A stretch of DNA of 38,744 bases from Choristocarpus tenellus KU-1152 (lineage: Eukaryota > Protista > Phaeophyceae). Shown piece by piece: positions 4,316-25,228 of this stretch (positions within the stretch are counted from its first letter, which is position 1; every line of letters begins with the position of its first letter). The translations under genes were made by a program, and so were the position numbers. The DNA lies in assembly GCA_964200185.2 (NCBI GenBank), contig CAXNAD020000034.1:1-38744 (forward strand), read 5' to 3'. The notes under the pieces are model-generated. The model did no database searches and had not been told where the DNA came from. It worked only from the letters and a program-made list of their open reading frames with translations.

Positions 4316-5449
4316 CAAGGTGTAAATATCACTTGTGGTAGGAAGGAAAGCAGAGGTCTGTATCAGCCCCTCTGTTAGTTTGCTTTGTGTGCCTTGTCCC
4401 CTCCTTACAGCTGGTTTGGATTAAGGTGATTGCCTCTTGTATATGACTCCTTGTCTTGTCAATATTGTGTCAAAAGAAAGACCTACTCTACAGTAGGTGA
4501 CTCTTCACCCCATAATCTCGTGGGTGCACCTAAAATGAACAGTGTTGCTGTCGTTTGTGTTTGTGCTTTCTGTTGAAGAGATTATTGATGAGGGATGTGA
4601 GGGGAGACATAAAAGATGGGATGGAAGTATTTCAACTTTGTTGCCCGCTTTCCTCTGCAAACTTGGAAATTTTCACTACACATAGGAAGGAGTATGCAGG
4701 AGATTCATGGGATGCAACCTAGAATCTTGTGAGACAGGTCTCAGTGAAAATTGGGCACTACATGGTACATCCAGGGGTATTAACTGAAGCAAAAATCTCG
4801 AGACAACCATGGCAATATGGGTTGGGATTCTTAAGTTCGGGTTGAGTAACCACACCACGATACTGCCTCGAAGATTCGTGAAGATACACACTTAATACAC
4901 TCAATTACTTTTTATTGGACACAAGAGATTTATTTCTGGGGCATTCACTTCCATATCTCACACAGGGATGTGTCCCATTATAGGTTCAAGTTGTGCACAG
5001 ACAAGAGGTCATGTTGTACAGTCCAATCCATGCAACAGTTTTCACTATCATACAGCAGCTGCAACATAGCAAACTATTGTGAAAAAAAGGTTGATGTCCA
5101 TCAATTGTAAAGCAAGTTCTGGTTTTCTTTCATCCTTACAAACACTTTAGCAGTGAAATGGGCAAATAATTCACCACAGCCTGTTTCTACATTATCTTCT
5201 TCCTAATTACATTTTCCTATTCCAGTGACAAGTAGAATGCTCTTATCAGCACCTGTCAATGGCTTCTGAATACCTTAAGGTATTGTCTATATATATACCC
5301 CAGGTACTCGGCTAATTCTACAATCCTACATATCGTTGGTTTGGATATATATAATTAACTTTGCTTCTAGCTACTCAAAGAAGGTAGACATCAACAAAAA
5401 AAAGTATAGCTGGATGGACTACACCCAAGCGCACAAGATAGACCTATTT

Positions 5450-6420
5450 TTTCCCAAGCAAATTTTCCCAAGATATTACAGGTTGAATCAGTTTCTGTCC
5501 AGTTTGTTTAGTCACCACCTATTCATAAATCAGCTTTTATCCCTCTTTGATCGAAAATGCCATTTTGTAAAAATCAAAAAATAAATTGTTCTGTGTATTG
5601 GCCAAAGAAAATGACAGAAGTTGACATAATTGAGGTCCCTTGAAGAGAAGTTGGAAAAATATCGAAGTGCCATATTTTTTCAAATTCTCCAGAAAATGAG
5701 GGGCAACATTTTGATCTGGATGATTGCTCTGAACCACTCTCTGGGTCACCCTGTACCAACCTCTGGTCAGACCATTTGACGTTGAAGAAAATTTGTGTCC
5801 TAGTACCTTTGGTCCATGCATGCAATATTCATCACATTATGGATCTGTTTCTGGAAATGAGCACATCAAACAACTCATCATTGGATGTCTTCTATATTTT
5901 GATTGGTGTGAAATCATTTCGGGAAAGTTCTGGCACTATTACGGTAAAAAGTGTATCTGTTCAAAACCAGATTTGGAATCCTCTTCAACAGTTTCATCAG
6001 TTCTTGTTACATCATCCAATTTGAAACCTTTGTGATTTATTGCCCCAACCTCGTTTGTGACTATTGTCTGAACCAATTGTGAGCCAAAGTAAATGACAGG
6101 TACTCAGGTTTTGGAGCTTTGCATCTTAATCCAGTTTCACAATCTTTTGCAATTCACCCATATCTCTATGGAGGAAGTGCTAAGTTTGATTTGAGAGCAA
6201 TGATTTCTCTACATCTATTGTTCGAAACTTCTTGACAGAATCCACAAAATCCTATCCACATTAATAAAAAATGGAAAATTTGCATATATTTGTCAGCATC
6301 CTTAAAATGCACATAATGCAACTCTGAGTACCTCTCATTTACTTTGACTCTGTCAAGAGTAGCAGTTTTGTATTGAGTACAGAATATTCCGGACATGATG
6401 CACAAAAAGACTCTGCAAGT
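5450..6420 (-). pseudogene. Decayed intronless coding relic, possibly TE- or virus-derived, with chromo-like segments
   Basis: Long protein-like frames on - strand broken by TGA/TAG stops and frameshifts, e.g. ELHYVHFKDADKY and SIM**ILHAWTKGTRTQIFFNVKWSD..VTQRVVQSNHPDQNVAPHFLENL. Resemblance to chromo-family folds judged by eye only. Confidence 0.3.
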
Positions 6421-6787
6421 GATTGGGAATCTAAATTAGAGCAACATTGTCATATGAAACTATGTACCACTTAAGCCAGTATTAAGTTATTGGCCAAGTG
6501 ATGTGCAGAGTTCAAGCTGAATCCAACCTACAAAGGACAGACAAGAATAGGCGTCACTATTGACATAATATACTGCTGTGTGCCTAAGATAGATAGATAG
6601 CTACCTGTAGAACCATATTTGGAGACAGATCGGGTTCAAAAGCTGACTGGGCAGTATGAAGCATACTTGTAGGGTGCATGGTTTGCTTGTGGTGCTTGAG
6701 GATTCAGAGCAAAACACCAAAAGAGGTCAATTCACTCAAAACTTCTGGAATGTGTATTTTCTACTTGTATGGAAAAGCACTGACACT

Positions 6788-9700
6788 CTACCCTCGAAGG
6801 TCTGAAATGGTCAGTTCCAAATCTTCCAAAGCGTATTCCTCAGTGAACCCCCCTGCACCCTCTCTGTAAGCCATCTCCCCATCAGCACGCCCCCCACCAG
6901 AACCAATGCGTACAGATGTGAACCTTAGGGTTACAGATATTATTGAGCACAATGGTTGGGGTACAGAGGGATTAGAAATTACTCAACAATACAGAGCAGT
7001 TGTGGAAAGCCCAACATTGTACAGCCTGTAAATTGGGTGTAACTATCTGTAGGCGAAATTCAACCCAGCATTGAATGCAACAGGTTAAAAAATAAAGACC
7101 TGCATATGACTTGAAGTGTTGACAAACAAGACGTATTCCACAAGATCTGCATTAGTAACACAGACAGCAACATGAATTCAATATTTTAAAACCTTGTTTG
7201 CCAAAACTAGACAAGAAAATAGGTCAGGTCTGACATGGGTTTCTTACCACCAAGGTGTATTGAAATGGGAGTGTACTATGAAGTCAACAGGAGGTACTCT
7301 AGTTCCTCCAAGACTAGCGCATCTACATATTGCCAAGAGTCTACCTTGCGCAACACAAGTCATACCCACCCCGTAGGCTTAGTTGCACCACTACTTCTAT
7401 TGATACCGATGGTGGATACCTGTGCCATCACCATAGAAGCAAATACCCTATCAAAAGGGTAGGACAGTGCACCAATATTGCTCTCAATCACATCATATTC
7501 TCTCATCTGCCACAGCATTGTATCAAAGAGCAGAGCATTCACTCATATGCATGTAGTACTTGTGCAACAATTTAGCTCACAACCCACAAAAAATGTTAAG
7601 GACACAGTGGTATCACTTCAGAAAAACAGTTGAAATTCCTCACCTCAACTCGCACATGAACAGGGCTGGAGAGTCAACCATAACCGTTGACCTGCCAGAA
7701 GTACTAGCTGACGGAGAATGGGTCAGCACAGTGTAGCAAGAGCCGCTGCCATGAGGCGAGAGGGCTGGAAGGGGACGCTCTTCCTCAAGGACGTACAGAT
7801 CCAAGTCACTGTCTCATGGTAAGGGGGGCAACTATTAGCAGGCAGGCAATAGAGTGTGCACTCTAAGGCAGTCTTGGCTTCATCTCTGATATTTTGCAAC
7901 TTGAGAGGAAGTGATGAGTCACTTTTATTGAAAGCACTTTGCATATTTCAGTAAAAATGTTTTTCGTGTAGGAAGAAAAATGCCTTAGTGGATTGATTGC
8001 ATACATTTATTTTTTAAATAACTATATTATTATTTTTAATTCAACTGCAGCACAAACAAGTAAAATCAACCATGCACGAAATGTGACGAGTTGTTACGTG
8101 TCCATCCCCCCTTTGGGGGGTGAGATTTGGTGGTATGGATGGATGAGAATCTCTTGAATAGAACGCAATGCTTCTGATTTCTCCATATGAACATGAGAGG
8201 GAACAATGATTGACCAAGTCAAACTCAAACTCTCCAATTCAGTGAGATATTCTAAACATTTGTCCATGTCTTGCTGTAGATGAGTTGCTCAATACAGTAC
8301 CATAAACAAGGCAAATTGGTAGTTGAAGATATGCTCTTTGACATAAGTATGACAGGGTCAAAACTTCAGCGCTCGGAGAGAGAGAGAAACCACCTAAGGG
8401 CCAAGCCTCAGATCAGAGTCAGGAAAGCACAGTGTTTTCTAAACTGAGTGCTAATCTTTACACAATACAACAGCCATACAGTGTCAGTTACAATACATTC
8501 AGCCGTCTCTAACGACCAAGAGAGATGGTTTCTATAGTCACGGTCTTCTGGCATGACCTGTTCTCTATGCATGAACCTTAGCAAGAATTATCATGGTATA
8601 TTGTTTAAACACACTTACAACTTGGTTCTCACTAAACAGTTGGACTTGGTGCATTCTTTGAATTCTACTCTAACCAATCAATTAGTTCTAGTCATTGGGA
8701 AAACTTGACTGACGAAATTTGAAGGTACCTTTACCCTCACTAGGACTACTAGGTACCTTTACCCTCACTAGGACTACCTCACCTGCATTCAACTCGCACC
8801 AGTACCTTTAGCAGTCGCTGATCATTGAGGCTGTTTGAAACATTGAACTGCAACACCACATGAGACTCAAAAATGTGCTTCACACAGCTTACTCTGTGTT
8901 AAGAGGGCAAGAAGTTCTTCCATGTCAGATGAACAGCTGGGGGAAAGGGTAAAACTTGAAATATTGAATCTGAATATGAACCTGGTAGAAACGTCTTGAA
9001 CCCTGTGAATTGTTAACTTCTATTCAAAAACATTCGAAGGTCTTAATCGCACCTTTTGTGCAAGTTTACAACCTCTGTAATGTGTGACCATCAACAGTCA
9101 TTAAAAAGTCAACTTCTGCTACCTAAGGTCAACAGCAACAACCAGCGAAACACATACTGTACAACAAGTATACTGTACAACAAGTATACTGTACAACAAG
9201 TATACTGTACAACAAGTATACTATACAACAAGTGAAAGCATTCTTCAGCACCCTTTCCAAAAGAAATTCCATAAATTAGATGTTTTCTAGCATGTTGGCA
9301 CCCTCACCATAGCTCTAGATACTAAGGCTCATCATCATCTCACCCAAAATCAGCACTTGGATCTGTCAGATCAACCGCAGGGCATGTATGAACAAGCTTC
9401 CCAAGATGAGAAAAGGACGCCAGAGACAGCTCAGGTACACGGCTGACACGGCTCTGCAGTCTAATCATTTCATACTTGACATTGACATAGTCTGCACGAC
9501 ATAGTTGGTGTACAATCTGGAGAGGCAAGCAGAGGGCCCAGCCAGGAGGAGTTAGGCCTAGGTGGGTTGACAGGTTTGAGTATGCATTTTTCATTGATCG
9601 TCTGATTTGATCGCTACTCTGCACAATATATATAGATATAGATACATAGATACAGATACATAGATAAAGATACACAGATATATAACATTCAAACTAGAGA

Positions 9701-12700
9701 CTTCTGCAACCTATAGATGGTACCTCTGTGTTAACACCAACCCAATCCACACAACTACTTATTGACCAACAGCAAACCTCGCTAGGAACACACACCTGTT
9801 TTGTACGCTTCTGTGCATCTGCGTGGATGATAGCCGAGCTTAAAAATGGGAGCAATTGTGACACCGGAGTATCTGCAGGAAGAAGGGCCAATGCCTGATA
9901 CAAAATAGCAGATTGTAATAATGACATGACAATGGCAATGGGCCTTATTCATTCACTGTGGGATGCCATGACTTAAGCAGAGAAGGCAATGAGTGCACTA
10001 CATACAATAAATAAATAAATACTAAGTAAACGGAGCATGAGAACAAAATTAACTGCAACTATTAAAAATAAAAGATAGCTAACCCACAACTGTCACCCTA
10101 CAACATGCTTCCAAGAATTGTTGAGATTCTGGCTGTTGGCAAATTATCTTACCTTTAAAGGATCCACTCGAGGAAAATGTCGTGTCAGGAGCGATATAGC
10201 TGCTTCAAGTCCACCCTCCTCCTCGGCAACCATTATCCTCTCAGTCTTGTTATCCATACCTCTACCGATACCTGTCTCTGTCCCTTGGGTCTTGGTGGTC
10301 TTCTTCTGTGAGCTGGCCAGTGACAGGTAGACCTTGAGAAGATAGACATAGACACCAGTGTCATTGGCCCATTCATCTGCAAAATATGACAGCCCGTCAG
10401 CACCAAATCATGGCACAGGGTTAATAAGCATTATGCAGCACCTCCCCTAGGCAGAATATTGTATTATGCACTAGTAGGTGTTAGACCAATGGGAAGGGGA
10501 TGAGAGGAACTTGGACAGCATGTGTACCAATCACTCTCTGTACACGCCTACTAACGATGGTGTCACATAGAATCTGATTATATATTTGTTCAAGCCACAC
10601 TCTATGGTTAGGGTGTATATGAATTCTAGCAGAGTATACCCCGTGTAAACAGAATAAATCTTGCCACGCCAAAAATGCCTTTTTAATGCATTGGGAGATA
10701 TCTCTTCCCCTGTACCTCGTCACACTTTCTGTGTGAAGTGTGACCTAATGGGGTGTGAAACTTATGTGCCACCTGTCAATGTCACCGCATTACCTGATTC
10801 AGAGCCTGTCACACTATGCACATAACAGAAAATCCCTGCAAGTCATTCAAAAGGCAACAAAAAGAACGACTTATCTGAAAATTAAAAAAGAACGAAACAA
10901 CATTACTGACACTACTACTACTTGCCTGCACCCAGTGCCTCTCGTCCCTGAGCAGTGCTCCTCTCCCATATGCGAGCACAGTAAGCCTCTGCAACTTCCC
11001 TATCCTTAAGCTGTACAGAGAGGTAATGTGCTTGTTGAGGTTGGATTTTGTCAGTACTTGTACACTGGTCAAACACATCACCTCACCAACTCAAGATGCA
11101 TACTTGTACTAGTCATAACTCATCCAATCACATCAAACCAGACTAGGTACAAAGTCTACAAGCCAAAGTGTTGCCACATCTAACAAAGATTTCAATCCTA
11201 TTCCCAGCAACTGATCTCTGTATGACAGCACACATAATTAGAAGGGACATAATGCTGACCAAAAGTGTCATATAGTGTTTTATTGTTGGTGTCAAGTAAA
11301 AACAATACTTTGCACCTGTCGCACGTAGATCTGTAAAACTTCGTCATGCCTCCCCAGGCGACTCAACAACAGGGCATGCTCCTCCAGGAAGTGTGAGGGC
11401 ACAACAGCAAGCAGTCGTGCTGGGTTGTAGCTCTCACTTGTCTGCAATTTGAATCCACAGTACACAGAATACAATAGTGCAGCAGCATGTCATCTACACA
11501 AGATAGACTTGTAATACATAGAGGGATGGTGTTCAATTGACGAGTGAAACCCTAACCCTTGAAAAAAAGGCTGCAAGAAAACTTTTGTGACAAACCATTT
11601 TTAAAAAAAATAATGGAGGTGAGAGATAACACATCAATGAAAGTGGTGGCAATCCGAATCACTCGCAATAATCATAATAATAATCATAATAATAATCATA
11701 ATAATAATCATAATAACGATCAGTGACAAGTCACCAATAATGAAATATAGACTAGATTGAAGTACAAGATATTTGCACAAAGAGTTGTATCAAGCACCAT
11801 CAGGTTTAACAAAAAGTATAGAACACCAGCAAACCACACCTCCAAGTGTGTGGAACACATTGGAAGACATTCAGGGACATTTCACAAGCTTCTTGGAACA
11901 CCAAAAATTGTTTGGCCTCTTGATACTGTTGTAAGACAAACTAAGTAAGACAAACTAAGTAAGACAAAGTCACAAAAGACTAAGTAAGACAAAGTTGAAA
12001 AAATTATCCTCCTTTCCTTCAATATAAATAGAGTATTCAAAGTAAACTATACCCATTACACTGTTAAATATATGTCTATTTGCACGTTGACCCCTCTAAC
12101 ACATCCAACACAGACCTAGCCCATGCCAAGATGTGTAGGACATGGGACAATTCACACTGGACTTGATCACTATTAAAAACCAAAGCAAATGGTAAGTGCA
12201 AACATCACAATTGACTCGTCTTCACAACTAGGTTTAAATTATAATCCACACTGTACAATATATACATAATATCCCATACAGTTCTCCAAAACTAAATATT
12301 GCATTTTCATCAGAATGACTGCAATACTACAGCACCACAGATAAGAAGCTGTGCTGTATCAATATATATATATATCAAATAGTGCATCCACCTGTAAGAA
12401 ATGTTGTAGCTGTTGCCGGTATACTCCAGTAATGCTGAGGCCAGAAGTGCAGGTGGCCACAGATGCCCCATCTGCTTGGTTGAGGTCTTTCACTGCTCCT
12501 TGTTCCACCTGATGACAAAACACATCAAGTGCTTCATATTAATAGTGGGAGCGTCTACAATACTATCAATATCACTATCGACTCATATCAACTCATATCA
12601 ACTCATATCAACTAATATCAACTAATATCAACTCCATCAATAAATGAAGCAGGTTGTGTCCAGGCCAAAAAACAATCAACAAACTCAATAAAGGTAAGAT

Positions 12701-15700
12701 CAACCATCACTATACATTTGCATGTTACTAGATACACAGAATGCAACGTGCCTTTCCACCAACACCAAACACACACAAAATAAAATAAAAGAGGACATAG
12801 GAGGCATACTTGCTACCTCTGCTCCTTTCCCTATTCTCACCAAAAGCCCCTCCATTAGAAGATATGCCAGCTCGTCATGAAGGGAGGAATCCCTAGCCAA
12901 CGTATTAGCTACACCTGAAGCTGATCTGGAGGTAGTCCCAGGCTCCCTACTGTAAGGCCCCCCTGATCCGCCGACAACCCACTGCCCTCGTGATTTTGAT
13001 GGCATTTGGGAACTTACAGAAATTAAACTTTGTAGATACCCAACTGCCAATGCACGTCCACTTGTCAGAGGAATTACACCAGGCAGTGTCAGAGAGGTCC
13101 TAGAAGACCTTGCCAACTGCGTGGTACCTTTGGGGTTAGGGCTTTGAGAAATGGGGGCAGAGTCCATTGCTGATCTCGCCTCAGTCTCAGCCTTCGCCCT
13201 ACCAGCCTGTGGGTATGAATATCATAGTGGAGAGGGGTAGCAGAAATGGATATTACAACCTTTACTAGGGAAGGCATTCTAAGGCTAGCATGGACTTGAG
13301 AAAATCCCACTTGGCTAACAATACAGTTCATGGGATAATCCTTGCTTCCAATACACTCACACCAGAATCATGGACTATCATATTCGTTCAAGGTCAACAA
13401 ACAAGGCAAAATACAACCCTACATGCTCCAAATGGGCATACAAGATGCTGCAGCTTAGACAAGAAAAGGTACATTCTCGTGGGAACACGCCTTTCGTGCA
13501 GGTTCACAGGTGGCTGCTTAGTTCATCTTGAGGCAATCACATGTACCCACCAGATATAACAGATGCGCTCATACATAGCTAATACCTACTAGCCCAGTAC
13601 AAAAGTACAAATTTTGAATTACAGGCTCTTGAGCCAAACCTTGGTCATAAATAGCCCAATAGTCAATACAATGTCAATACAATGTCAATACACAGGAAAC
13701 GAAAAAGAACACTGAACAAACATCAACCCATAGAACTCAACCAAGAACAGAAACATATACAAGGACAGTACAGCAAACCATTTGGTGATGACAGACTTGA
13801 AAGAACATGCGTCTGGCACAGTCCTTGACCTGTCCTTGACCTGTCCTTGACCTGTTCGGAGTCAGATGCCCCCCCCCCAATTCCTCACCTCAGATGGTGT
13901 AACGCCCTTCAGGAACAAAACCACATCCTGAGCTGCCAGCCCTTTTCCTCCCGCATTAAATAGTTCTTGCCCCTTCCTCCCCCCACCTCCCCTCCTACTC
14001 TCATCTCCTCCTACGCCTGGTCTTCGCAAGTGCCCTGTTGTTCCATTTCCCAGAGAAACTCCAGTAAAGACTGAGAGGCCCAGGGCAGGGTCGGCTTCAA
14101 TCAAAGGTCTTGCTGCACGAAGAACCAATACAGGGTGGTTAGGGTCTGGTGATAGCCACAGCTCTCTAAGGTACACAGCCAGCCAACGGTGGAAGTCTGC
14201 CTTGGTCCATACACCAGTGGCGCCACTGTTGGGCGTTTGTGATGATGCTACAGCAGCACCGGGTGGGGGGGCAACACACCTGATAGTGTGGTAGGGAAAA
14301 GCAAGTAAGCACACTATGGTAGGCTTAACATGGGAGATGTGTAGACAGGCACCCCACTATACACGCTTGAACTATGTTTTAGTACTCCTTTGCTGCACTT
14401 GTTGACAAAACTTGAAAGGAGTACTAACCTTGGGAAATGGAATGTGTAAGGCAAACATTGTATACTGTCTATCATTAAAAAAAACCCATTAGTATGTGGC
14501 TGCATGCAGAAGATACACAACTGCCATTGGACCCTTTACAGTTGGTCGGCACAAACCCATTGAACAAGCTCTTGTCCAGTCTAGGAACTGACGGGTGACC
14601 TAACACACAGTTGATGTTCAAAAAGAACTTTCCACCTCTGAGGAGTCACTAACAAGAACATCAACCTTGCATTAGCAAATTGCAAGTATTAGGACAGTCC
14701 AAACCTTGTCTTGGTGTGTTAACCAAATATTTGCAACTTCAAGGATACTCACTCTTGGAAGTCAACAGTCACTCGCTGAATTTTGCCAAGGGCTACCTAC
14801 TTCTCACTTGACACTGCTTCATTCTACCCCATCCAAAGTGTTCAATACAACCACAGCACACTAGGATAATAATTGTCAAACACAAAACAGACCTGCAAAT
14901 CACTTTGCACTGCCATGCACAATAATGAAAGAGCCTAATAAAAGTTTCCTGCATATCTCAACTCACACCCTGACAATAAAAACACAAAGCTGTAGTCTGA
15001 ATAGCACTTAAAATCAGTCAATAAGTTGTAGTTCAAAGAAAATGAGCGGCTCAACATAGAGATGTGTCAATCAACATAGAGATGTGTCAATCAACCCCCT
15101 ACTACGCTTCATCCTGTCCAAGGGTAGTGCATCTAAATCGATAAGTGCAATGCGCAGCAATGTAGACAACTGTAATATGACACCGTACCTGCACAACATT
15201 ATTAGTAACACTTTTAATAACACTTTTAGTAACACTATTAATAACACTTTTAATAACACTATTAATAACAAAAATACTGAAAATCACAATCACATGGATG
15301 AGGGCTAAAACCATCCACCTCATAACATTCCCTCTTGGGTCTCTTGCCTATCCTCTGTAGCTAGTGCCAAAGCCTCCCTATGCCGTCCCCTACCCCGATG
15401 AAGCCAGAGCAGGGCCTCCACAAATGTAGGTCCTCCAGCAGCCAAAAGAGGTGCACAGGCTTCCAGTTGGCACCGGTTGGGGCCACTCAGCAGCTCAATC
15501 TATCAGTGCATAGGTGCATATATATATATATTGGATAGTTCATCAAGCAAGGGTAGTCCAGGGCACATTTTAAAAGTGCTGAAACTCATCCATTTGATGA
15601 TAGAATGTATCAATATACCATATTTTTTTTAAATACCAAGAATAATGATTTGCTGGTAGTGGAGACAATACCACAATACCACAGGAAAATAGAAAACTTG

Positions 15701-18700
15701 CCCAAGTAAAACGTATGACACAATATTGAATGATTCTTGAAATTCTACCCAGCAAACTATTTATTTTTCTTGTACAACTGCTTTTACGAAATATAGCAGA
15801 CGCCTTACTACCCTGTACATTGATGACATCGATGATATGGACTGATGAAAAAACTCCAGTACCAGGAATGACCAAGGAGCACATTCAATCCAAGGGGTGC
15901 ACAGTGTGCAGAGTGGCGGAAATCTTGTGCTTCATTACCTGAACAAGTATGTTCCCAGAACAGCATAGTTAACACAGCCTTAACTGAGACAGGAAATGCC
16001 TTGCAAAGACATACATCAATCTTGAAAGAATAAACATTGTATAGTGCTCTGCAACTTGTACAAGATGGTCTACACTTCCTGATCTACAACCAAATCGCTT
16101 ACTACTAGTGGGAGAGAGGAATCAACTGTTGCATTTATCATAAATGATGACCCCACTCACACCCTAACCACCCACCAATGCATTGTTCCTTGGAGGACCG
16201 CATTGCATGTATGCCGACAGCAGAACTGTGTCTACAAGCTCTGCCGTTTGTAGTGCTGTTTGTAGTGCCGTTTGTAGTGCTGCTTCACCCTCATTTCCCA
16301 TCGCAACACTCCCCCCAATCACAATTGAGTCAGGTTCTAGCTTTGGCTAGACCATGATGGTACACGTGTCAATAGAGTGACAACAAAAAAATGAGACATT
16401 AGGGTTAGGGTTAGGGTGACAGAGTTTTAGCTCACAAGTAACATTTGAAGTTAGGGTTAGGGATACAATGTGCAATACAATACAAGGCATATATGCAACA
16501 GGGTTAGGATCAGAGCATTTCAGGACCTGCAGGCGGCTGTTCTTCAAAAACAAATCCAACATGTAGGCAAATCTGACTCGATGTTTTCGGCACCTCAAAT
16601 TTGAACAAAGATCACTAATCCATATCTGTCGTACCCCCGGTGTGCATAATATTGGCCAACAACACCTTGTACCAGATAGGTCTCCATTTACCTGACACCA
16701 AACAAAAAAAAATCAACTTTGTGATGGACAAGTTACGGACAGCATCACCACAAAGGACACACAAAGGACACACTTAAGAGCACGCTCACAACCCTCCTTC
16801 ACCCTCTTATCCACACACCTCCTCATCTCCAGCGTCAACACAGTCAAAACGATCAGCTGCAGCAATCACAGCACCCCTGTGTTTCTCCAGGAAGCGCACA
16901 AGAGCACTTGCAGCACGGCTCCGGCTCACCTGTTGCAGGCCACATAAAGTGCACGTTCTGTTATATTTTATCTTGTTCAAATCAGATCATTGAATCGTTA
17001 ATAAAATGTTGTCACCTACCTAATAATATTACCTTGACATAATGTTTCTACTTTACAAACCATGTAGTACTATGAACAACTTGGTATGACAACACTTGCA
17101 CTGTGTTCACCATTGGCACTGACAGCAACATACAAATGAGGTTGTAGTGTATTACTATTGCTCCTGTAACTGGTTCTGTTGCTAATGAAGCAATCAAAAT
17201 AACTTCTCTGAATGGTTTCAAGCAATGCTAGTGATATGGTGCTACCAATGCCTCTCAATCCAGAAAGTATTTTTGCCCTGACAATAATAAGTACCAATAC
17301 CTTTAAACAAACTTGTACTTTTCTAGTTTACATTTGGAATAAAATATATAGGGAATAATATATATAGGGAATAATATATATAGGGAATAAAATATATAAT
17401 ATCCATATTGAAGGTTTGCCTGTTTATAGCACCAGACTAATTTAGTGTGCAGAACACCAAGAGAGTTTTATTAGTTACTCGAAATACCTACCAGCAACAG
17501 AAAATACCCAACTTTTGCAAGAGGCCATCATCAAATGGTTTAGGTAAGCAGGACAAGAATGGTCCCACTGAACACAGATACTCTTCCAAAAATACTACAA
17601 AACAGACCTGGACAGGAAGCTGCTAATCCATACAAAAGGTATTACTTTACTGATTGCCTTTTTGAGGGTGTTACAAGGATCTTATCAATTAAATATTGAA
17701 AACTATATAGGAAGAGGGTAAAAAATGTCAAGGGTCTCGGCACAAGCTGCAGCGTGCCACCATCTCCAAAATGACCTGCTGGTACCAAAAGCAGGCAACT
17801 TGAGGCATCAACTGTTATCTGGACATCAACTGTCTCAAGCACAGTCAACATCCTGGGCAAGCCTGCAAAATATGACACTGTACTACTGCTGTAAAAGTAA
17901 TGGGGGCCCACACTTACCCTGATTGAAAAGGTACACACAGTTGTCAATCCAAGTGGACATCACAGCAATAGTAGGACACATAGTGTACCAAAACAGCCCC
18001 CCCCAGATTTTGTCCCAAGACTAGCATCCAGGGTCAAAGAGATTTAAAGGAAAGAGATTTAGAGAGATCCTTACCACACAAATTGATACTGAAGTAGGAA
18101 GTGCATAGGTACACACCATGGTCAATGAGACACACCATGGTCAATGAGACCCCCAAGTTCTCCCAGACTGCCATTGGTAGTTGAGTGAACAAGTTCAAAA
18201 AAATTTACCCCTAAAAGAATCAAGCAAGATAAGAGCCATCTGCCAAACAGCACCAGCATCAGGTGACTCTCTTAAGTTTTTCTTTGAGTGACCATGAACC
18301 TCTGCAAATACCTCTGCAAATAACTAAACTTGAGGAGCATACTATCAGCTGAGTCAAAACATACTCAAATCTGAATTAAATTACAGTCATAGTCAATGTC
18401 CAGAAACACCTCCTGAAAGCTTCACTGGGTCTGTAATGTCTGTCTATGATATGCCTCTGGAGTATACCTCCAAAATAGATGTAAACAGCAGAAGCAACAC
18501 CAGGTACCTAGAACCTTTCAACAGAAGAACAGGACACCAAAACACACACACTGCACTATTGTGTCTTCTACTATAGGTATCATACCATGTATCAATAGCG
18601 TAACATCTCTCCTTTTGTACCCATCACCAACAGTAAGAATAAAAATTAACAACCCAACACATTGCACTGAATCTATCTGTCACAAATCATATTGGATCAT

Positions 18701-21700
18701 CGCCAGTACTCTCACCCCTGTCACCACTCTTGGGGGTCTATGTGCCTGTTCTTCATTTGTAGCATGTGCACTTTGCAGCGATTGCCAGTATGGTGTGGCA
18801 CCCTTGCCATCTTTGCCTAAAGAGGAAAAATACAATGCAGGTACTTGGTGAGCTAAAACTAATGTTGCTAATTCATCTTCATTATTACCATTAATATTAT
18901 CATTCAATTAAAACAATGGAGGGAAACATTCAGTGTAGCTTGGGCACTATCTCAGGAGCATGCTCAATTTGTACTATGTATATGCAGCCACAACAACTTA
19001 AGTCACTCACTTAAATTAATCCTAAAAACATTTCATACCTCCATGACAGATAAATGTACAAGGAAAGTAATTAGCAAACCAGGCCTTTCTCAGGATTGAA
19101 TCATCATTCTACATGTACTTGCACAGCATTGACCAACAGGAATGGCTTCTTAACATTAATGCTACATATCTTACCCCAATCCTGATCTTAGATGCAGCAA
19201 AACATATCAGCAACTGCACCATTTTGAGATCATCAGCTACTCAACTGTGAAATTCATAACAAGCTGAAATTTTATCTTCATGATTTTCCAAAGGGTCTTA
19301 TTGAAGTATGTATGACACCTTGTAAAGTAGCAAACAATAACCTTTACTAGAGTCTACTACTACTTCCTAATTCTTAGCACACCATGGATGTTGACGATGT
19401 ATGATGTCACCATGGATGTTGTGCCCTTTACTCCAACCCTCAGCATATAAAACATTAAAACCACACCATACATCCACTAAGACTCAGACATAAACAACTA
19501 CACCTTCTTGAGGCACAGCATACTCTGGTGGTGCCAGAGATGGGAACAGCCCCACCACCCTTGCAACTGGGGTGTCTGCTGCAAGAAAGTGCCCCACTGC
19601 ACCCTCATAGTCTCCCCATGAAAAGAGGTCATAAGCATATCGCTCATGGATAGTCCGGATGTCCACCGATCCCAGCACAGACATGTCCTATCATCAATAA
19701 ATGATTGTGACAAAGTACATATACCAGAGATGTGAATGAGGTATCATCTTTCCTGTTGTTGGATGAATATCACAATTGCCTATCTAGCTCTTCTCGATGT
19801 GGCCTGTTGTACCTCACATATGCAGGAATAGGTTGAATTGACTTTGGTTGACGCCATACTGTGGTGAATGTACTCTAAGGAAGCGAATTCAAAATAATGC
19901 AGCAGTTACTAACAACTGCATCCCCCTGGTAAGGCAAGAATTGTATTTTTTCAACTGACAACTGGTTTTAGCTCCAAGTAAACATCAAACCACAAACACT
20001 TGAGACAAGACATCCCACCTTACACATGGCGCATAGGCTGAGTGCATCCTCATAGCTTCCAGAATCCACAAGAGTTTCAACCTTCAACAAACACAGATTA
20101 TGAGGGAGGGTCACAGCCTGAGGATTGCGCAAACCAATTATGAGCATCAACATACAGTCTCCTCCAGTGGTGCCATTATCATCAAAAATATAGAACAGTA
20201 CACTTCTCATCTACACTCTTCCAAAGCATCAATCAATGAAACACATAGACTTGAAACAATTTGAAGACACAAACCACGTACTACACCACAATTTTAACCC
20301 TTCACCTTTGTCCTCCCTCTCCTCTGGCAATCTACACAAGAATCACTCAGGAAGCTTTCAATGTATCACTCATCTGTGCAAGATACAATCCCCACCTGAA
20401 ACTCAATTGGGATGAGCTTGAGGAGGTTGACGGAGGTACCTGTTGCTACATACGTAAGGGCCCCCCTTCCTCCTCCTACAGGACAACTTGTCATGCATGT
20501 TGCTCCTGATATGTCGATGGTCTGTAGAGGGGCAAGGCTGGCAACATCATGCACCTCCACCTGACCACAGGAAGACAGGGCAGGGAGCAAGCTATTATGC
20601 TGAGATGTGACACCATGCCATAGTAGGATTTACTAAGACAATGAGCACATCTACCCAACTAAAACTGAAAATAGGATAGGTACAGTCTGGGTACACCAGA
20701 TATATGTGACTATTGCACAACATGCGTGGATTAGGCAAACAGGGGTATGGTACAAGGCAATCATGCACTATGATAATATTGATAGTAGTTGTGCTGACAA
20801 AAAGACAGCATAAGTGTGTACACTCCTTTAATGGCTGCCATGGTGCTGCATATCAAGCATCAAAAGTTAAGAGGTCCTAAAAGTGTGCTTCAGTACACAG
20901 TGCACCCTGGTCTGCATAACTCAATCACACCTGACGAGGCAGTACAGCAACAAAGAAAGCTGTTGACAGGTCTACTGAAATTGGTGGAGCACTCCATGTC
21001 AGTCGTTCCTCGTGTCCACGCCCAATAAGGTCCACCAAAAGACCACGAGAACCACTGCAACAATAAAAGCATGGTAACAGCAATAAAAGCATGGTAACAG
21101 CTAAGATGTCAGGTTGAGGCGAATGTAAACAATGACACCTATTTCATCACCAATGTCACCACCAATATCACCACCACATTTTGTATCCCCTGTACCAATG
21201 AAATGAAACAATCCCGCAGTTACGAGGTGAACCTCAAAGTGGAGGCAACCACTAGATGATATGAATCACAAATGATTTCATGTATAATGTAGATTATCTT
21301 TGTCGAAGTAGGACTTCAATTGGACGCATATGCACCATGGTCACAAATTGCTAAAGATTGCATGCAGAGTCTAGCACAAAAAAACTGTGATCATGCATAC
21401 TGCAAGGATCAAGCATGGCTACACTACAAGCTACAGGATACAGCACAAGTATATTCTCTCTTATTATGCAATACAACTAGAGCATCAAGTCACTCTGAGC
21501 AACTAGTCAGGAAAATAAAAAATATGACTAAATGATCAGCAAGATCCGACCTCCACTCTGTGTATACCCTTAACTGTACCTGGAGAGGAGTACCCTTGAT
21601 CCACGTGCTGCTGATGCCTTTACTGCCAATATAATGCCATTGTTGTTTACTCCACTAGTACCTCCAAGTCCAGCTGATGAAGATAAGCTGCCACCGCACA

Positions 21701-24700
21701 GTAAAATGAAATATATGGCCCGGGAAGGAAATTGTGAATTGGATACAAAGGTGTGTAGAGAAGCACAACCATCTTCCTCCTCATCCATCTCATGCAAGTT
21801 TGTGTCCACATACTCAGCAGACTCTTCATTAGTCTCTTTCACATTCAAGTAATGGTGTGCCGATTTCTTTAAGAATTGCATAGGGTCACTATTACAGATA
21901 AGAGATAGATATACTTGGCATCATCCAGAAACATGACCATGGATTGAGACACCAAAAAAATAAATAAAAAGACCAATCACATCATACTATCCTTACAATC
22001 TACCATCACACAATCACAGGAATAGCCGTTTTACTCTACTTTTCACACATCTCCATGTACTGCACACAACTAAAAAGGAAACAAACTACACAAACAAATT
22101 ACAATAACTAAGGATGACCTGACAGATGCACCAGACCTTTAGTTCCTCTCTCTTAAATTGGAATTCAACTTTTCCATGCCCCTCACTCCGTAAGCATAAT
22201 GAATGCCATCCCCCCCACAAGAGTCGTGCCTGAGACGATCTAACAGTGTGCATCAGCACCACTGCAAACATCACAGACTGCAAACCAGACCTCACCTTGA
22301 CACTCCGGAGGAATCAAGTTGGTCCCGCTCCGAAAGAAGGAGCACTGGAGTCAATGCACCAGTCGTAGTATCTAAAACACTATATTCCTTCCGGAGTGAC
22401 ATCACCAGCTTCAGAAATATGTTGAGATTGGAAATAGAGGGTGGATTTGAATCACATTTAGTTGTACCTTTATTGGCAGTCATAGGACAACACTTGTGAA
22501 CTGATTATTTGACACTTCTCATCACACAGTTGTTCCCTTATCATTTCTGGGGGAGAAGAAGTATGAAAAGGTGTGACACCATGCCTACTGCAAAGTATAC
22601 ATGTTGGCATGGGCTCACCCTCGATCCCGTCACACTCCCACCCATTGCTGTTTCAGTAGGTACCAATGCCAATACCCGAGGTGTTTCAGGGAGTGGAAAC
22701 TCCTTTCGAGGTGCAAGGCTCACAGCCTGCCAAGCCAGGACCTGCAACACAAAGTGTAAACATTTTGTTGGAAGTAAGATTACTTTGTTTCGGTATTCTC
22801 CTTAGAAGATTGTACATGACCACAAGTGCACCGCATATGAATTATGGCTATGAAAGGAGAACAGGGGTGCCTAAATGGAACATTGGTAGAGAACTACCAC
22901 GTGAGGTACTGTGCATGAGGTGATATTGTAGCTGTGCTGTATGTACATTGGGTTAGCTACAGAGTGGGATGTCACACGGCAAGACTTAACACAACTTCAA
23001 CATCACTGACAATGAATGTACACTTCAACATTGAAAAATGCAAATGTGAACAAATGTCAAAAGAATACAACCTACAGACAAGACGGTCACGGACTATGGT
23101 AGGAACAAACAAGATGGAATCAACTACTATTCCGTCTTGCCTAGCATGATGTTCTTTGTTAAAAAGTAGGCCATCCAAAGCACCAGGGCTAGCTCATTGT
23201 CTACAATGTCTTGGAATAATATGTTCTAAATGCTATGATTAATGGTCCCCATCCCTAGCAAGATTGGAAATAAAACCATCCCCAATGACAATTCAGAAGT
23301 GCAATAAATCTTAAAGCAACAAGGGACTACATCCTTTAGTCAACACCCAAGTACTCCCGGATTCGAGACAAAGTCTAACTTTTGACTGAAGAAAACAACG
23401 CATATTTCTCTCATGAAGTCATATTTCTCTAATGAAGTCATATTTCTCCAAGTCATATTTCTCTAATGACTCTAATGACTCTAATGAATTCAGACAGCAA
23501 CAAAAAGAAAATAGCAAAACGATCCACAAGACAAGAGATGAGGATCCCAGTGACCTTCAGTAAGTGAGGATCAAGCAGATCAATGACAAAGAGGTGACCC
23601 CCAAAGAAAGCAATACATCCTTTGAAGTAGCAAGTAAATGGGTCAGGTTATGCAAATCAAAGTATTTTGTGTAGATTTGCAGTAGAGGGGCATAGCTGGG
23701 GTGAGAGTCCAACCTGAAGGCGCTTCTTGTTGGCCACAAACACCAAACGTTGTGCTTCATCAATGCAAAAGCATGACGCTCCCTTCGTCTCAGGCACACT
23801 CGCCAGGGGACGATATGTGTACAGGTCATACGCTACAAGCTTCCAAAAGGATTGTTCCATTCCAGGCGTCAGGAATGGGGAGAAAAGGGGTGGGTGAGTG
23901 TGTGTATAGACTTGAGACATGTTCAAGGCATAAGATATCCTTACAAAGTGAAGGTAATCCGACCACTTCAGACCTCAACAGTGGTAAGGACCCTACCCCT
24001 AAGGCTGCGGACCAGCTTAATCAGGTACGACCTGCTTACTATTCTGCATTGGTCCATCGGTAGAAGAGTGGCATGTTATCAGCTTAAAAGCTAAAAGAGA
24101 CCACAATCCAAATTGCACTCGTTGAGACAGCAACAGGTCCCTGCACTGAACAAACCATCGAGCGGTCACAAACCGGACAAGGTCGAATTCATGTTTGCTG
24201 GAAGAGTATGCTGCTCTGTTAGAAGTTTTCTTTACCTGACTATCCAGAATCCCCAGCAGTGCTCGCCAGCCTTCAACAGCAAGAAGCCCTACTACCGGTT
24301 TCCTGTCGACTGCAAGGCCTTTCCGAAGACTTTCCACCTCGCGGCACTCAAATGACCCTGCACGAAGGGCGTTTGTGGTATCTCCCCTACACTCATAGGC
24401 TACCAGGCTGCCGTCTGTTGTACCCACGAACATTCGCTCGCCAGCACCGACTACTGCAATGGTGCTCACCTGTTAAAAAAAAAGAGCGAGACCTAGTTTT
24501 CAAGTTGCTTTTGAACTTACTCGATGTTGCACTCACCATAATTTATAGCTTTTTTTCCACACGATCACGACGCACATGCATACCATGAACGCATCCTCAA
24601 ATGAAAAGCCAGTGGATGACAATCCAACTATTGCAACTTCTATGTCCAATTTTCCTAGGAAATTTGCTTCGGTGGGTTGTCTGCCGATATTGTGACAATT

Positions 24701-24739
24701 TGGGGGAAGACATAATTTTCCACTTCTCTTCAATAGCAT
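6788..24739 (-). CDS. VPS39: Vps39/Vam6-TGFBRAP1(Vps3)-family protein (CNH beta-propeller + alpha-solenoid/clathrin repeat) with C-terminal gamma-COP appendage domain, ~1307 aa, 25 exons
   Basis: Exons (- strand): 24739-24584, 24469-24236, 23839-23714, 22741-22619, 22408-22296, 21687-21580, 21054-20931, 20560-20396, 20081-20019, 19687-19504, 18816-18716, 16929-16819, 16346-16176, 15499-15348, 14279-13889, 13206-12841, 12508-12392, 11441-11316, 11010-10926, 10376-10153, 9894-9796, 9516-9344, 8893-8783, 7808-7644, 6923-6788. Total 3924 nt, in frame. Motifs: MFVGTTDGSL and ASCFCIDE (CNH), IPIEFQVETLVDSGSYEDALSLC, LVDTVLLSAY...LLSGPNRC...LLWLHRGRGRHREAL (Vps39_1-like), LQHFLQTSESYNPARLL...EEHALLLSRLGRHDEVLQIY...AEAYC, VDPLKALALLPADTPVSQLLPFL. 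Start codon is tentative, and Vps39 versus Vps3/TGFBRAP1 paralogy is unresolved. Confidence 0.9.
8723..8777. repeat. 28-bp tandem duplication next to a splice donor
   Basis: aggtacctttaccctcactaggactac(t) x2. Confidence 0.95.
9154..9233. repeat. 16-bp minisatellite (ATACTGTACAACAAGT) x5
   Basis: Four perfect units and one single-mismatch unit. Confidence 0.95.
9625..9682. repeat. Degenerate hexamer microsatellite (ATATAG/ATACAG)n
   Basis: Visible directly, intronic. Confidence 0.8.
11667..11716. repeat. 12-bp repeat (AATAATCATAAT) x4
   Basis: Visible directly, intronic. Confidence 0.9.
12581..12633. repeat. 10-bp repeat (ACTCATATCA/ACTAATATCA) x5
   Basis: Visible directly, intronic. Confidence 0.9.
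15200..15269. repeat. 12-bp degenerate repeat (TTAATAACACTT-like) x~5-6
   Basis: Visible directly; explains spurious repetitive ORFs at 15071-15323. Confidence 0.85.
16399..16508 (+). repeat. Interstitial telomeric-type repeat cluster (TTAGGG)3 + (TTAGGG)2 + partial
   Basis: 16399-16416, 16451-16462 and ~16500-16508. Confidence 0.85.
17425..18300 (+). mobile_element. Heavily decayed Ty3/Gypsy LTR-retrotransposon pol relic (RNase H end, integrase Zn-finger, integrase core), antisense in a Vps39 intron
   Basis: Colinear motifs with stops and frameshifts: STRLI*CAEHQESFISYSKYLPATEN (cf. RL.RW...L..F...I.Y.PG..N) at ~17428; LLVPKAGNLRHQLL...HPG (cf. L.VP...LR..LL...H....HPG) at ~17775-17860; AIGS*VNKFKK (cf. 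AI.V.VDRFSK) at ~18170; LPNS...D..KF (cf. GLP.SI.SD...F) at ~18240. Confidence 0.6.
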
Positions 24740-25228
24740 TTCTTGTCAGTCAGCTTGAGCACCCTGACAGAAATTCGTCCCTGACTTTCCATCACGAGGA
24801 AAACAGGAAATGGTATCATTAATCAGCATCGCCATACGCATGGTCATGATGCCTTGCGAAATGTCTACAAAATTACCCAAGTAAACAACACATTGCGAGA
24901 ATTTGCTCCACCTTCTTGGTGCGAAAACCCAACAAGGAGGATACATCGTATGCCGTACGAGGCATATCTTCACCAGAATGTTTGCTTTACACCTTCACTT
25001 TTGATTTCTCTCCTCATCTCCTGAAGGGGTAGGTCAGGTTAATTCAACCTAGGATTGGAGAAGATGTATTAAGAGAAATCGGTCAATATTTACCATGAAA
25101 TCGGGCTGGGCATGTTTGTGTGGGTTCGTTATATGAATCAGCACTACCTCAAATCTCTACGTTACGCAACAAGAATTTGGTCGACACGGATAGGCTTACA
25201 CGAATGCCCAACCTTTGAATACAGGAGG
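24740..25228. promoter_or_regulatory. Putative bidirectional promoter within a CpG-rich island (Vps39-like <- -> GNAT)
   Basis: About 490 bp between divergent start codons; CpG density is high across ~23700-25700 compared with CpG-poor gene bodies. Confidence 0.6.

What the first reader, a model, noticed from the sequence alone, without database searches (positions are those of the whole stretch)
6788..9516. Vps39-family tether subunit whose C-terminal zinc finger is replaced by a gamma-COP (COPI) appendage domain
Seen: exon 9516-9344 begins with the terminal Vps39 helix (IVHQLCRADYVNVKYEMIRLQSR). In the same exon and frame it switches to gamma-COP-like sequence (VPEL..FSHLGKLVHTCPAVDLTD), which continues over three more phase-matched GT-AG exons (VSCVKHIFESHVVLQFNVSNSLNDQ / GSCYTVL..FMCELRF / EEYALEDLELTISD) to a stop at 6788. 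No CxxC...HxxC finger follows the helix. Known: Vps39 (HOPS) and Vps3/TGFBRAP1 (CORVET) normally end in a zinc finger, and their C-terminal region docks onto Vps11; the gamma-COP appendage is an adaptin-ear-like module of the COPI coat. Inference: this is a chimeric trafficking factor coupling a CNH propeller/solenoid to a coat-derived ear, possibly linking endolysosomal tethering to COPI/Golgi traffic or acting outside HOPS. The junction is inside an exon, so it is not an artefact of merging two genes. I know of no description of this architecture.
Basis: partly seen in the sequence, partly recalled or inferred. Interest (0 to 1): 0.9.

Follow-up and report, generated by a model that had tools for sequence, protein, structure and literature searches.

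The report
Vps39 tether ending in COPI ear
This alga's only detectable Vps39 (a vacuole/lysosome tethering subunit) really does end in half of a COPI-coat "ear" instead of the usual zinc finger; the fused gene is transcribed and conserved across brown algae and their sister classes, yet no searched paper describes it.

Summary
On the minus strand a 24-exon gene runs from the ATG at 24965 to the stop at 6790-6788, with a 3'UTR to about 5891. It is colinear with a 1234-aa Ectocarpus protein.

The exon 9516-9344 starts as the long terminal Vps39 helix. At about 9436/9435 it switches in frame to gamma-COP appendage sequence, which continues over three more GT-AG exons. Contigs of one public run carry exactly the proposed splice joints. 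DNA contigs of two other runs are contiguous across the junction exon.

No zinc finger exists in the window or, above cut-off, in the assembly. The added module is only the beta-sandwich half of the gamma-COP ear (Pfam PF08752). The ArfGAP-binding platform half is absent.

The fusion is not unique to this genome. The same architecture occurs in Ectocarpus, Pylaiella, Scytosiphon, Discosporangium, Phaeothamnion, Chrysoparadoxa and unnamed marine transcripts. The fused sandwiches group together (support 99/99), which fits one old fusion.

Best reading, by inference: this is the lineage's HOPS Vps39. It keeps the helix that locks onto Vps11 and carries a coat-derived sandwich where the zinc finger used to sit.

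The sequences are in public databases but unnamed, and I found no paper on the architecture. It is a new variant of a known kind. This scan had not noted it on other DNA.

The parts
5891..24965 (-). Whole transcription unit of the Vps39-gammaCOP fusion gene (about 24 coding exons plus 3'UTR)
   Evidence: tblastn of Ectocarpus P0070 residues 1-1232 gives 24 colinear HSPs from 24965 to 6797. The ortholog profile matches the same exons. An X2 contig ends at 5891.
24963..24965 (-). Start codon (MPRTAYDVSSLLG...)
   Evidence: The N-terminus matches the MPR(T/S)A(F/Y)E... start of the orthologs.
19511..24472 (-). Exons of the N-terminal beta-propeller (CNH domain region, ortholog residues about 18-428)
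   Evidence: tblastn at 52-86% identity to P0070. PF00780 CNH scores 3.6e-10 to 1.1e-14 in orthologs. The profile hits the C. thermophilum Vps39 N-terminal structure 7zty at 1.1e-22.
15323..15499 (-). Exon with the Vps39_1 domain core
   Evidence: PF10366 at E 5.2e-5, 23.9 bits, above the 22-bit cut-off. It is the only PF10366 hit in the assembly.
9796..9894 (-). Penultimate Vps39 exon (ALALLPADTPVSQLLPFLSSAIIHADAQKRTKQ), start of the long terminal helix
   Evidence: X2 joints 9893/10152 and 9516/9796. Sequence. AF2 helix 54-101 of the ortholog fragment.
9436..9516 (-). Vps39 half of the junction exon: end of the long C-terminal helix (IVHQLCRADYVNVKYEMIRLQSRVSRV)
   Evidence: It aligns with all orthologs. 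The profile region before it matches yeast Vam6 839-969 of 1049.
9344..9435 (-). Gamma-COP half of the junction exon (PELSLASFSHLGKLVHTCPAVDLTDPSADFG), hinge and first strand of the sandwich
   Evidence: PF08752 positions 10-35, weak alone at E 0.12. It aligns with canonical gamma-COP 'IPELAHLGRAFR...LTESE'.
8783..8893 (-). Sandwich exon 2 (VSCVKHIFESHVVLQFNVSNSLNDQ...)
   Evidence: PF08752 at 8.8e-12. Gamma-COP chains 1r4x, 1pzd and 5a1u_E. X2 joints 9344/8893 and 8783/7808.
7644..7808 (-). Sandwich exon 3 (DLDLYVLEEERPLPALSPHGSGSCYTVL...FMCEL)
   Evidence: 79% identity to P0001. Profile E 1.8e-12. X2 joints.
6788..6923 (-). Last coding piece (…FTEEYALEDLELTISDLRG) with the stop TAG at 6790-6788
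   Evidence: The orthologs end at the same point...ADLRGS or ...ADLGE.
5891..6787 (-). 3'UTR, same exon as the stop; contains a high-copy repeat at about 5976-6363
   Evidence: X2 contig record 10 is continuous over 5891-6921.

Best explanation
Shown: this is a real, transcribed and evolutionarily conserved gene. Its product is a Vps39-family protein with an N-terminal CNH beta-propeller, a Vps39_1 region, a TPR-like alpha-solenoid and a long C-terminal helix. Its zf-Vps39_C zinc finger has been replaced by the beta-sandwich subdomain of a gamma-COP appendage. The evidence fits one old fusion in ochrophyte algae, inherited vertically since. Inferred: it is the lineage's HOPS subunit Vps39. The propeller/solenoid end still binds the Rab7-type GTPase. 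The retained long helix still forms the coiled coil with the long helix and RING of Vps11. The sandwich hangs on a short flexible hinge (RVSRVPEL) at the Vps11/Vps18 hub. There it either clamps a neighbouring beta-propeller, as the gamma-COP sandwich clamps beta'-COP, or it offers a docking surface for an accessory factor, as stand-alone GAE ears do.
For: Reality of the gene: spliced contigs with all four joints in X2, DNA contigs contiguous across the junction in X1 and X3, and no second DNA copy in the assembly. Conservation: the same junction and the same end of the protein occur in Discosporangium, Ectocarpus, Pylaiella, Scytosiphon, Phaeothamnion, Chrysoparadoxa and unnamed JGI/ENA transcripts, with precomputed Pfam PF00780+PF10366+PF08752. 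A further JGI contig has the PF08752 ORF directly after the Vps39 ORF. The sandwich is as conserved as the rest of the protein or more so, for example 67% against 53% for the solenoid between Ectocarpus and Discosporangium. The fused sandwiches sit on one side of a branch with support 99/99, and their internal order follows the known taxa. Vps39 identity: the profile hits the C. thermophilum Vps39 propeller at 1.1e-22 and yeast Vam6 at 2.3e-7, with no Vps3 hit at E<=1. The Atlas's nearest cluster is 'VPS39 subunit of HOPS' at 0.85, which is a lead only. Sole copy: a profile search of the assembly finds only this gene and the canonical gamma-COP on C10660. HOPS partner: a Vps41 propeller exon lies on C2813 (2.8e-15). 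Structure: the AF2 model has a 48-residue helix, a low-confidence hinge and a sandwich with pLDDT above 90. The best PDB matches are 1pzd, 1r4x and 5a1u_E at 1e-11 to 1e-13, followed by GGA and gamma-adaptin GAE ears. Atlas neighbours are all coatomer gamma, at rmsd 2.3-3.1 A. Established knowledge: the long C-terminal helix of Vps39 interlocks with the Vps11 helix and RING and also touches the Vps18 propeller (PMC9592082). The gamma-COP sandwich base binds the second propeller of beta'-COP, while the platform binds ArfGAP (PMC5482573).
Against: No binding, localisation or HOPS membership was tested. The partner of the sandwich is unknown. Vps11 was not found in the assembly by exon-level Pfam searches, although those searches also miss this gene's own CNH domain. 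Orthology to Vps39 rather than Vps3/TGFBRAP1 rests on PDB profile hits and an Atlas lead, not on a phylogeny. The record for run X2 does not say it is RNA. The assembly is fragmented (27,310 contigs), so a second, canonical Vps39 could be missing from it.
Confidence: 0.6

Rival explanations
1. HOPS-COPI or vacuole-Golgi/ER coupler. The sandwich keeps the ancestral beta'-COP-binding surface, so the protein, inside or outside HOPS, physically links Rab7 membranes to coatomer-bearing membranes or competes with gamma-COP on beta'-COP.
For: The sandwich base of gamma-COP is the conserved beta'-COP contact (PMC5482573). The fused domain keeps 38-40% identity to canonical gamma-COP of likely stramenopile origin (taxon not confirmed), including the PEL..LG, VxCxKHxF..HVVLQ, CEL+F and EEYxLE motifs. 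Vps39 has HOPS-independent contact-site roles in yeast (my own knowledge, not checked here).
Against: Many of the shared residues look like fold-core positions (my reading of the alignment, not mapped onto a structure). Conservation of the interface was not mapped. The domain has evolved as its own clade on a long stem of 0.39 changes per site, which fits a new partner. No experimental or modelling evidence exists.
Confidence: 0.15
2. The protein is the CORVET-type paralog (Vps3/TGFBRAP1-like) or a third, lineage-specific paralog working outside HOPS. The true Vps39 is either lost or missing from this assembly.
For: Vps39 and Vps3 share CNH, Vps39_1 and the zinc finger, so Pfam cannot tell them apart. 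No phylogeny was made. The sister alveolates mostly keep only Vps3 (PMC4501334).
Against: The profile hits Vps39 structures (7zty at 1.1e-22, 7zu0_E at 2.3e-7) and not the Vps3 expected in the CORVET entry 8qx8, whose Vps11 chain is in the library. The Atlas's nearest cluster is VPS39. The HOPS-specific partner Vps41 is present. No TPR_Vps8 hit was found, though that search is weak.
Confidence: 0.15
3. Artefact or non-functional: an assembly chimera, a read-through of two genes, or an exonised gamma-COP pseudogene fragment giving an aberrant transcript.
For: The assembly is fragmented. No run on record is labelled RNA. Exons 3 and 4 of the sandwich have no Pfam hit on their own.
Against: The junction lies inside one exon and is contiguous in the DNA contigs of two further runs. 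The same junction, frame and protein end occur in at least seven other taxa, including continuous ORFs on transcript-like contigs. The sandwich is conserved like the rest of the protein and folds with pLDDT above 90.
Confidence: 0.02

Closest known systems
Vps39/Vam6, Rab7-binding subunit of the HOPS tether (yeast 7ZU0 chain E; C. thermophilum N-terminal domain 7ZTY)
   Same: CNH beta-propeller, Vps39_1 region, TPR-like alpha-solenoid and a long C-terminal helix. Profile hits are 1.1e-22 to 7zty and 2.3e-7 to Vam6 residues 839-969.
   Different: It lacks the zf-Vps39_C zinc finger. About 170 residues of gamma-COP beta-sandwich follow the long helix instead.
Gamma-COP (COPG1/Sec21) appendage domain, PDB 1R4X and 1PZD, and in the coat 5A1U and 5NZR
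   Same: The beta-sandwich subdomain is shared: Pfam PF08752 at 1.6e-24 to 5.6e-36 in orthologs, 31-33% identity with Foldseek E 1e-11 to 1e-13, and rmsd 2.3-3.1 A to Atlas coatomer gamma models.
   Different: It has no Adaptin_N trunk and no linker. It also lacks the platform subdomain (PF16381) that holds the ArfGAP site, because the protein ends at the sandwich/platform border. The canonical full gamma-COP appendage is encoded elsewhere, on G000:C10660, with different intron positions and only about 30% identity by eye (not computed).
GAE ears of gamma-adaptin and GGA proteins
   Same: A single beta-sandwich ear at the C-terminus behind a flexible hinge. These are the next-best structural matches, at E 2e-5 to 3e-4. 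They are known hubs for short peptide motifs.
   Different: Only 8-13% identity. This is a working analogy for how a lone sandwich can act, not a family assignment.
Vps3/TGFBRAP1, the CORVET counterpart of Vps39
   Same: The same general propeller-solenoid-zinc-finger plan and the same Pfam families.
   Different: No hit to a solved Vps3 chain at E<=1. Orthology was not resolved by a tree.

Membership tests
Vps39/Vam6 family (HOPS subunit) | N-terminal CNH-type beta-propeller | tested here: met
   PF00780 scores 3.6e-10 to 1.1e-14 in the orthologs P0070, P0073 and P0074. The profile hits the 7zty Vps39 N-terminal domain at 1.1e-22. The window exons are colinear with P0070 residues 18-428. The exon-level Pfam search of the genome itself was blank.
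Vps39/Vam6 family (HOPS subunit) | Vps39_1 domain (PF10366) within an alpha-solenoid | tested here: met
   Window exon 15499-15323 scores 23.9 bits against a 22-bit cut-off. It is the only such hit in the assembly.
Vps39/Vam6 family (HOPS subunit) | C-terminal zinc finger (PF10367 zf-Vps39_C) | tested here: not met
   No hit above cut-off in the window or the assembly. No matching Cys/His ORF lies downstream or in the introns. The domain is absent from all orthologs.
Vps39/Vam6 family (HOPS subunit) | Long C-terminal helix that pairs with Vps11 | tested here: inconclusive
   A 48-residue helix is predicted at pLDDT of about 80, and the region before it aligns to Vam6 839-969. Pairing with Vps11 was not tested.
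Vps39/Vam6 family (HOPS subunit) | Assembly into HOPS and binding of Rab7/Ypt7 | not testable with these tools
   This needs co-purification or modelling with partner sequences, which I could not obtain in admissible form.
Coatomer gamma subunit (COPI) | Adaptin_N trunk (PF01602) | tested here: not met
   Absent from the fusion proteins. The upstream part is Vps39.
Coatomer gamma subunit (COPI) | Appendage beta-sandwich (PF08752) | tested here: met
Coatomer gamma subunit (COPI) | Appendage platform subdomain (PF16381) with the ArfGAP-binding site | tested here: not met
   The protein stops at the subdomain border. No PF16381 is present in any fusion protein.

The most novel reading that the evidence does not exclude
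The coat-derived sandwich still binds a COPI outer-coat propeller (beta'-COP). Ochrophyte algae would then have hard-wired their vacuolar Rab7 tether to COPI-bearing membranes, a direct HOPS/Vps39-COPI bridge or contact site not known in any other eukaryote. It might relate to the unusual endomembrane layout around their complex plastids.
Probability: 0.12. Interest if true: 0.8.

Novelty: new variant of a known kind. Interest (0 to 1): 0.55.

Why it matters
HOPS and CORVET are described as sharing one plan across eukaryotes: a propeller, a solenoid and a RING or zinc-finger end that locks the subunits together. Here a large and ecologically important algal group has exchanged the locking finger of its Rab-binding subunit for a module taken from the COPI coat, and has kept it through long divergence. 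This is a clear natural case of domain shuffling between two protocoatomer-derived machines. It gives a natural test of how much the Vps39 zinc finger matters for HOPS assembly. It also gives a stand-alone gamma-COP sandwich whose partner can be looked for. The Ectocarpus protein has been in public databases as a 'conserved unknown protein', so naming the architecture also improves annotation of all brown-algal genomes.

Tried and rejected
- **Assembly chimera or merged genes:** rejected.
- **Alternative zinc-finger exon:** none found by regex or Pfam, and no alternative joints are listed for X2 (65 further joints were not shown).
- **Junction exon against PDB sequences:** no hit; the exon is too short and mixed.
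- **Wider homolog searches with P0070 and profile A1:** I therefore could not establish whether diatoms, oomycetes or other stramenopiles carry the fusion or a canonical zinc-finger Vps39.
- **Exon-level Pfam searches of the assembly:** CNH, VPS11_C, TPR_Vps8 and PEP5_VPS11_N were blank. They are uninformative, because CNH misses even this gene.
- **RNA evidence:** no run is labelled RNA. X2 was used because its contigs carry intron-less joints.
- **Joined protein:** Full-length database orthologs (P0001, P0070) and exon-by-exon references stood in for it.
- **Atlas searches:** only canonical VPS39 and coatomer-gamma clusters came back. Only clusters of 50 or more members are searched, so this says nothing about rarity.
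- none occurred.
Full report
**1. What is in the sequence**

The window is contig C34 of a 164-Mb eukaryotic assembly in 27,310 contigs.

On the minus strand, exon 9516-9344 reads IVHQLCRADYVNVKYEMIRLQSRVSRV. Without a frame change it continues PELSLASFSHLGKLVHTCPAVDLTDPSADFG.

Three further exons follow: 8893-8783, 7808-7644 and 6923 onward. All three boundaries are in phase 2 with GT..AG borders. The reading frame ends ...EEYALEDLELTISDLRG with TAG at 6790-6788.

Exon 8892-8785 on its own hits Pfam PF08752 (COP-gamma_platf) at 8.8e-12, above the curated cut-off. It also hits the solved gamma-COP chains 1r4x, 1pzd and 5a1u_E at residues 649-682. The gamma-COP half of the junction exon is weak alone (E 0.12, profile positions 10-35).

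No Cys/His finger ORF of the Vps39 type lies downstream or in the introns. PF10367 zf-Vps39_C has no hit above cut-off in the whole assembly.

**2. Is the chimera real?**

A DNA search of the assembly finds only the window itself, so there is no near-identical second copy to confuse an assembler.

Three public runs of one study hold the stretch. Laid on 5200-11000:
- X1 and X3 give unspliced contigs. X1 record 8 (9193-11000) and X3 record 21 (9193-9564) cross the junction exon without a break.
- X2 gives contigs with joints 9796/9516, 9344/8893, 8783/7808 and 7644/6923, and further upstream 9893/10152 and 10376/10926. All are CT..AC on the plus strand except one CT..GC, that is, GT-AG and one GC-AG intron on the minus strand.
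- In X2 the depth is 300-700 on exons and 1-30 in introns.
- One X2 contig joins 7811-7642 to 6921-5891. The stop codon therefore lies in the terminal exon, followed by about 900 nt of 3'UTR.

X2 is not labelled RNA on record. However, intron-less joints that are absent from the two sister runs and from the assembly are what cDNA-derived contigs look like.

**3. The whole gene**

tblastn of the Ectocarpus protein P0070 (1234 aa) gives 24 colinear HSPs from 24965 to 6797, covering residues 1-1232. The ATG at 24965 opens MPRTAYDVSSLLG, like the orthologs.

Exon 15499-15323 carries Vps39_1 (PF10366) at 23.9 bits against a 22-bit cut-off. It is the only PF10366 hit in the assembly.

Exons were searched by reference, and full-length database orthologs stood in for the whole protein.

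**4. Relatives**

The exhaustive representative search with exon 8892-8785 put a 737-aa protein first (83% identity). This is CAM9544144.1 of the brown alga Discosporangium mesarthrocarpum. It shows the same junction (...QIMHQLCRADYVNVKYELIQLQSRVSRVPELSLASF...) and the same end (...ADLRGS).

Searching its C-terminal 193 residues found the same tail in several taxa:
- Ectocarpus siliculosus (1234 aa, 'conserved unknown protein'; UniRef 'CNH domain-containing protein')
- Pylaiella littoralis
- Scytosiphon promiscuus
- two EukProt proteins
- Phaeothamnion confervicola
- Chrysoparadoxa australica
- three unnamed JGI/ENA proteins

For the full-length proteins among them the precomputed Pfam lists combine PF00780 CNH with PF08752 (the brown-algal ones also PF10366 Vps39_1); the partial ones show PF08752 alone.

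My own hmmscan gives PF08752 at 1.6e-24 to 5.6e-36, CNH at 3.6e-10 to 1.1e-14, and no zinc finger.

P0073 and P0076 are single long ORFs on 3.6-5 kb transcript-like contigs. This looks like mRNA-level support in other taxa.

On a JGI contig with few introns, the 'Vam6/Vps39-like' model P0085 stops at the junction helix. The next ORF carries PF08752, so this is the same fusion split by a gene caller.

Exon-sized hits from other GC-rich contigs start and end at the same residues as window exon 8893-8783 (VSC/VGC ... VECR). One of them, P0006, matches the Ectocarpus sequence residue for residue across this exon. The intron positions are therefore shared with other genomes, which by their similarity are probably brown-algal.

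**5. One origin, kept by selection**

In a maximum-likelihood tree of 34 sandwich domains, the ten fused ones lie on one side of a branch with support 99/99. Inside that group the order is Chrysoparadoxa, then Discosporangium, then the Ectocarpales-type sequences. The nearest outside sequences are canonical gamma-COPs such as the MMETSP protein P0078.

I left out three rows (P0064-P0066) because they belong to the same 90% cluster as P0018. The root is a midpoint root only.

The sandwich is as conserved as the rest of the protein or more so. Against Ectocarpus:

| Ortholog | Sandwich | Solenoid |
|---|---|---|
| Discosporangium | 67% | 53% |
| P0073 | 52% | 49% |
| Chrysoparadoxa | 52% | 47% |

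. This fits one old fusion followed by vertical descent under constraint.

**6. What the two halves are**

A profile of ten fusion proteins against PDB sequences hits:
- the gamma-COP appendage at 1.6e-28, covering only chain residues 614-762 of 5a1u_E;
- the C. thermophilum Vps39 N-terminal domain 7zty at 1.1e-22;
- yeast Vam6 (7zu0_E) at 2.3e-7 over residues 839-969 of 1049.

No Vps3 chain appears at E<=1, although the CORVET entry 8qx8 is in the library. The Atlas's nearest cluster is 'VPS39 subunit of HOPS' (0.85, a lead only).

The alignment with canonical gamma-COPs shows homology from ...(I/V)PEL... to ...EEYxLE.... The fusion proteins stop where canonical gamma-COP continues (...DFMAKV...) into the platform subdomain.

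AlphaFold2 on the Discosporangium fragment 470-737, with 12 aligned sequences, gives:
- a 48-residue helix (residues 54-101, pLDDT about 80);
- a low-confidence hinge at 99-106 (RVSRVPEL);
- a beta-sandwich at 117-260, with pLDDT mostly above 90.

Foldseek places 1pzd, 1r4x and 5a1u_E first (2.8e-13 to 1.7e-11, 31-33% identity), followed by the lone GAE ears of GGA and gamma-adaptin. The Atlas structural neighbours are all coatomer gamma or beta (the gamma ones at rmsd 2.3-3.5 A).

The added module is therefore only the sandwich half of the ear, not the whole appendage.

**7. The rest of the genome**

A profile search of the assembly finds only this gene and contig C10660. C10660 encodes a canonical gamma-COP appendage with both subdomains. 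It is about 30% identical to the fused copy by eye (not computed). Its introns lie after ...EDQ and ...KFQ, in phase 0, which are different positions from those in the fused copy.

A Vps41-type propeller exon lies on C2813 (2.8e-15).

Searches for Vps11 and Vps8 families were blank. The same kind of search misses this gene's own CNH domain, so those blanks carry no weight.

**8. How it probably works (inference)**

In yeast HOPS, the extended C-terminal helix of Vps39 is interlocked as a coiled coil with the long helix and RING of Vps11. It also contacts the Vps18 beta-propeller (PMC9592082). The algal protein keeps that helix and loses only what follows it.

[quoted passage not shown] The exposed platform recruits ArfGAP (PMC5482573).

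The most economical reading has three parts:
- The protein is still the HOPS Vps39 of these algae, docked through its helix.
- The zinc finger has been replaced by a propeller-binding or peptide-binding sandwich placed at the Vps11/Vps18 hub.
- The ArfGAP-recruiting function was not transferred, because the platform is absent.

I give this reading 0.6. The rivals are a true COPI link through beta'-COP (0.15), a Vps3-like or extra paralog acting outside HOPS (0.15) and an artefact (0.02).

**9. Novelty**

Full-text searches returned no paper describing the fusion. The terms were Vps39 with gamma-COP/appendage, Vps39 with stramenopiles/HOPS/CORVET, Ectocarpus with Vps39, and the Pfam domain name. 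The comparative study that includes Ectocarpus does not mention it in its text.

The sequences and their automatic domain hits are public. The architecture is therefore 'seen by databases but not described'. The scan's own notes hold nothing on it.

I class it as a new variant of a known kind and score interest at 0.55. A trafficking specialist would be surprised by a conserved HOPS subunit carrying a COPI ear fragment. Its function remains to be shown, and it is not a new kind of system.

Noticed in passing
window 5976-6363 (inside the 3'UTR): High-copy repeat. Summed contig depth jumps from about 20 to 4400-5900 in X1 and to about 850-1170 in X2 and X3. Many contigs break or join differently here, and loose ends cluster at 6276-6351. 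It is probably a dispersed short transposable element sitting in the 3'UTR.
   Followed up: no
window 9170-9245 (intron between exons 9344 and 8893): A 17-nt tandem repeat (GTATACTTGTTGTACA G, about 4 copies). The DNA contigs of all three runs end at 9183/9193, and a 1-nt length difference is seen at 9175.
   Followed up: partly
window 10377-10925: A GC-AG intron in the same gene (donor GCAG|GCAAGT), supported by the X2 joint 10376/10926 with CT..GC ends.
   Followed up: partly
G000:C10660:431-4700 (loci L002, L004, L005): Canonical gamma-COP appendage gene with both subdomains. Its exon appears to begin exactly at (K)VPEL, behind a T-rich tract and an AG. That is the residue where homology starts in the fused gene, so the fusion point may coincide with an old exon border. 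Its intron positions inside the sandwich differ from those of the fused copy.
   Followed up: partly
G000:C10660 (4.7 kb): There are twelve short telomere-like (CCCTAA)2-4 runs in 4.7 kb, against four in the 38.7-kb window. Either they are an interspersed repeat of this genome's introns or the contig has a different origin. I could not lay reads on it.
   Followed up: no
G000:C2813:120-1851: Vps41-type beta-propeller exons (PF23411, 2.8e-15), that is, the other HOPS-specific subunit.
   Followed up: no
L025 8389-8820 (JGI contig Ga0654607_0000089): In an unnamed relative with few introns, the gene caller split the fusion. The 'Vam6/Vps39-like' ORF ends in the junction helix, and a separate 143-aa ORF carries PF08752. 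Public annotations of this gene are likely truncated in several genomes. The Laminaria and Scytosiphon models are also partial.
   Followed up: partly
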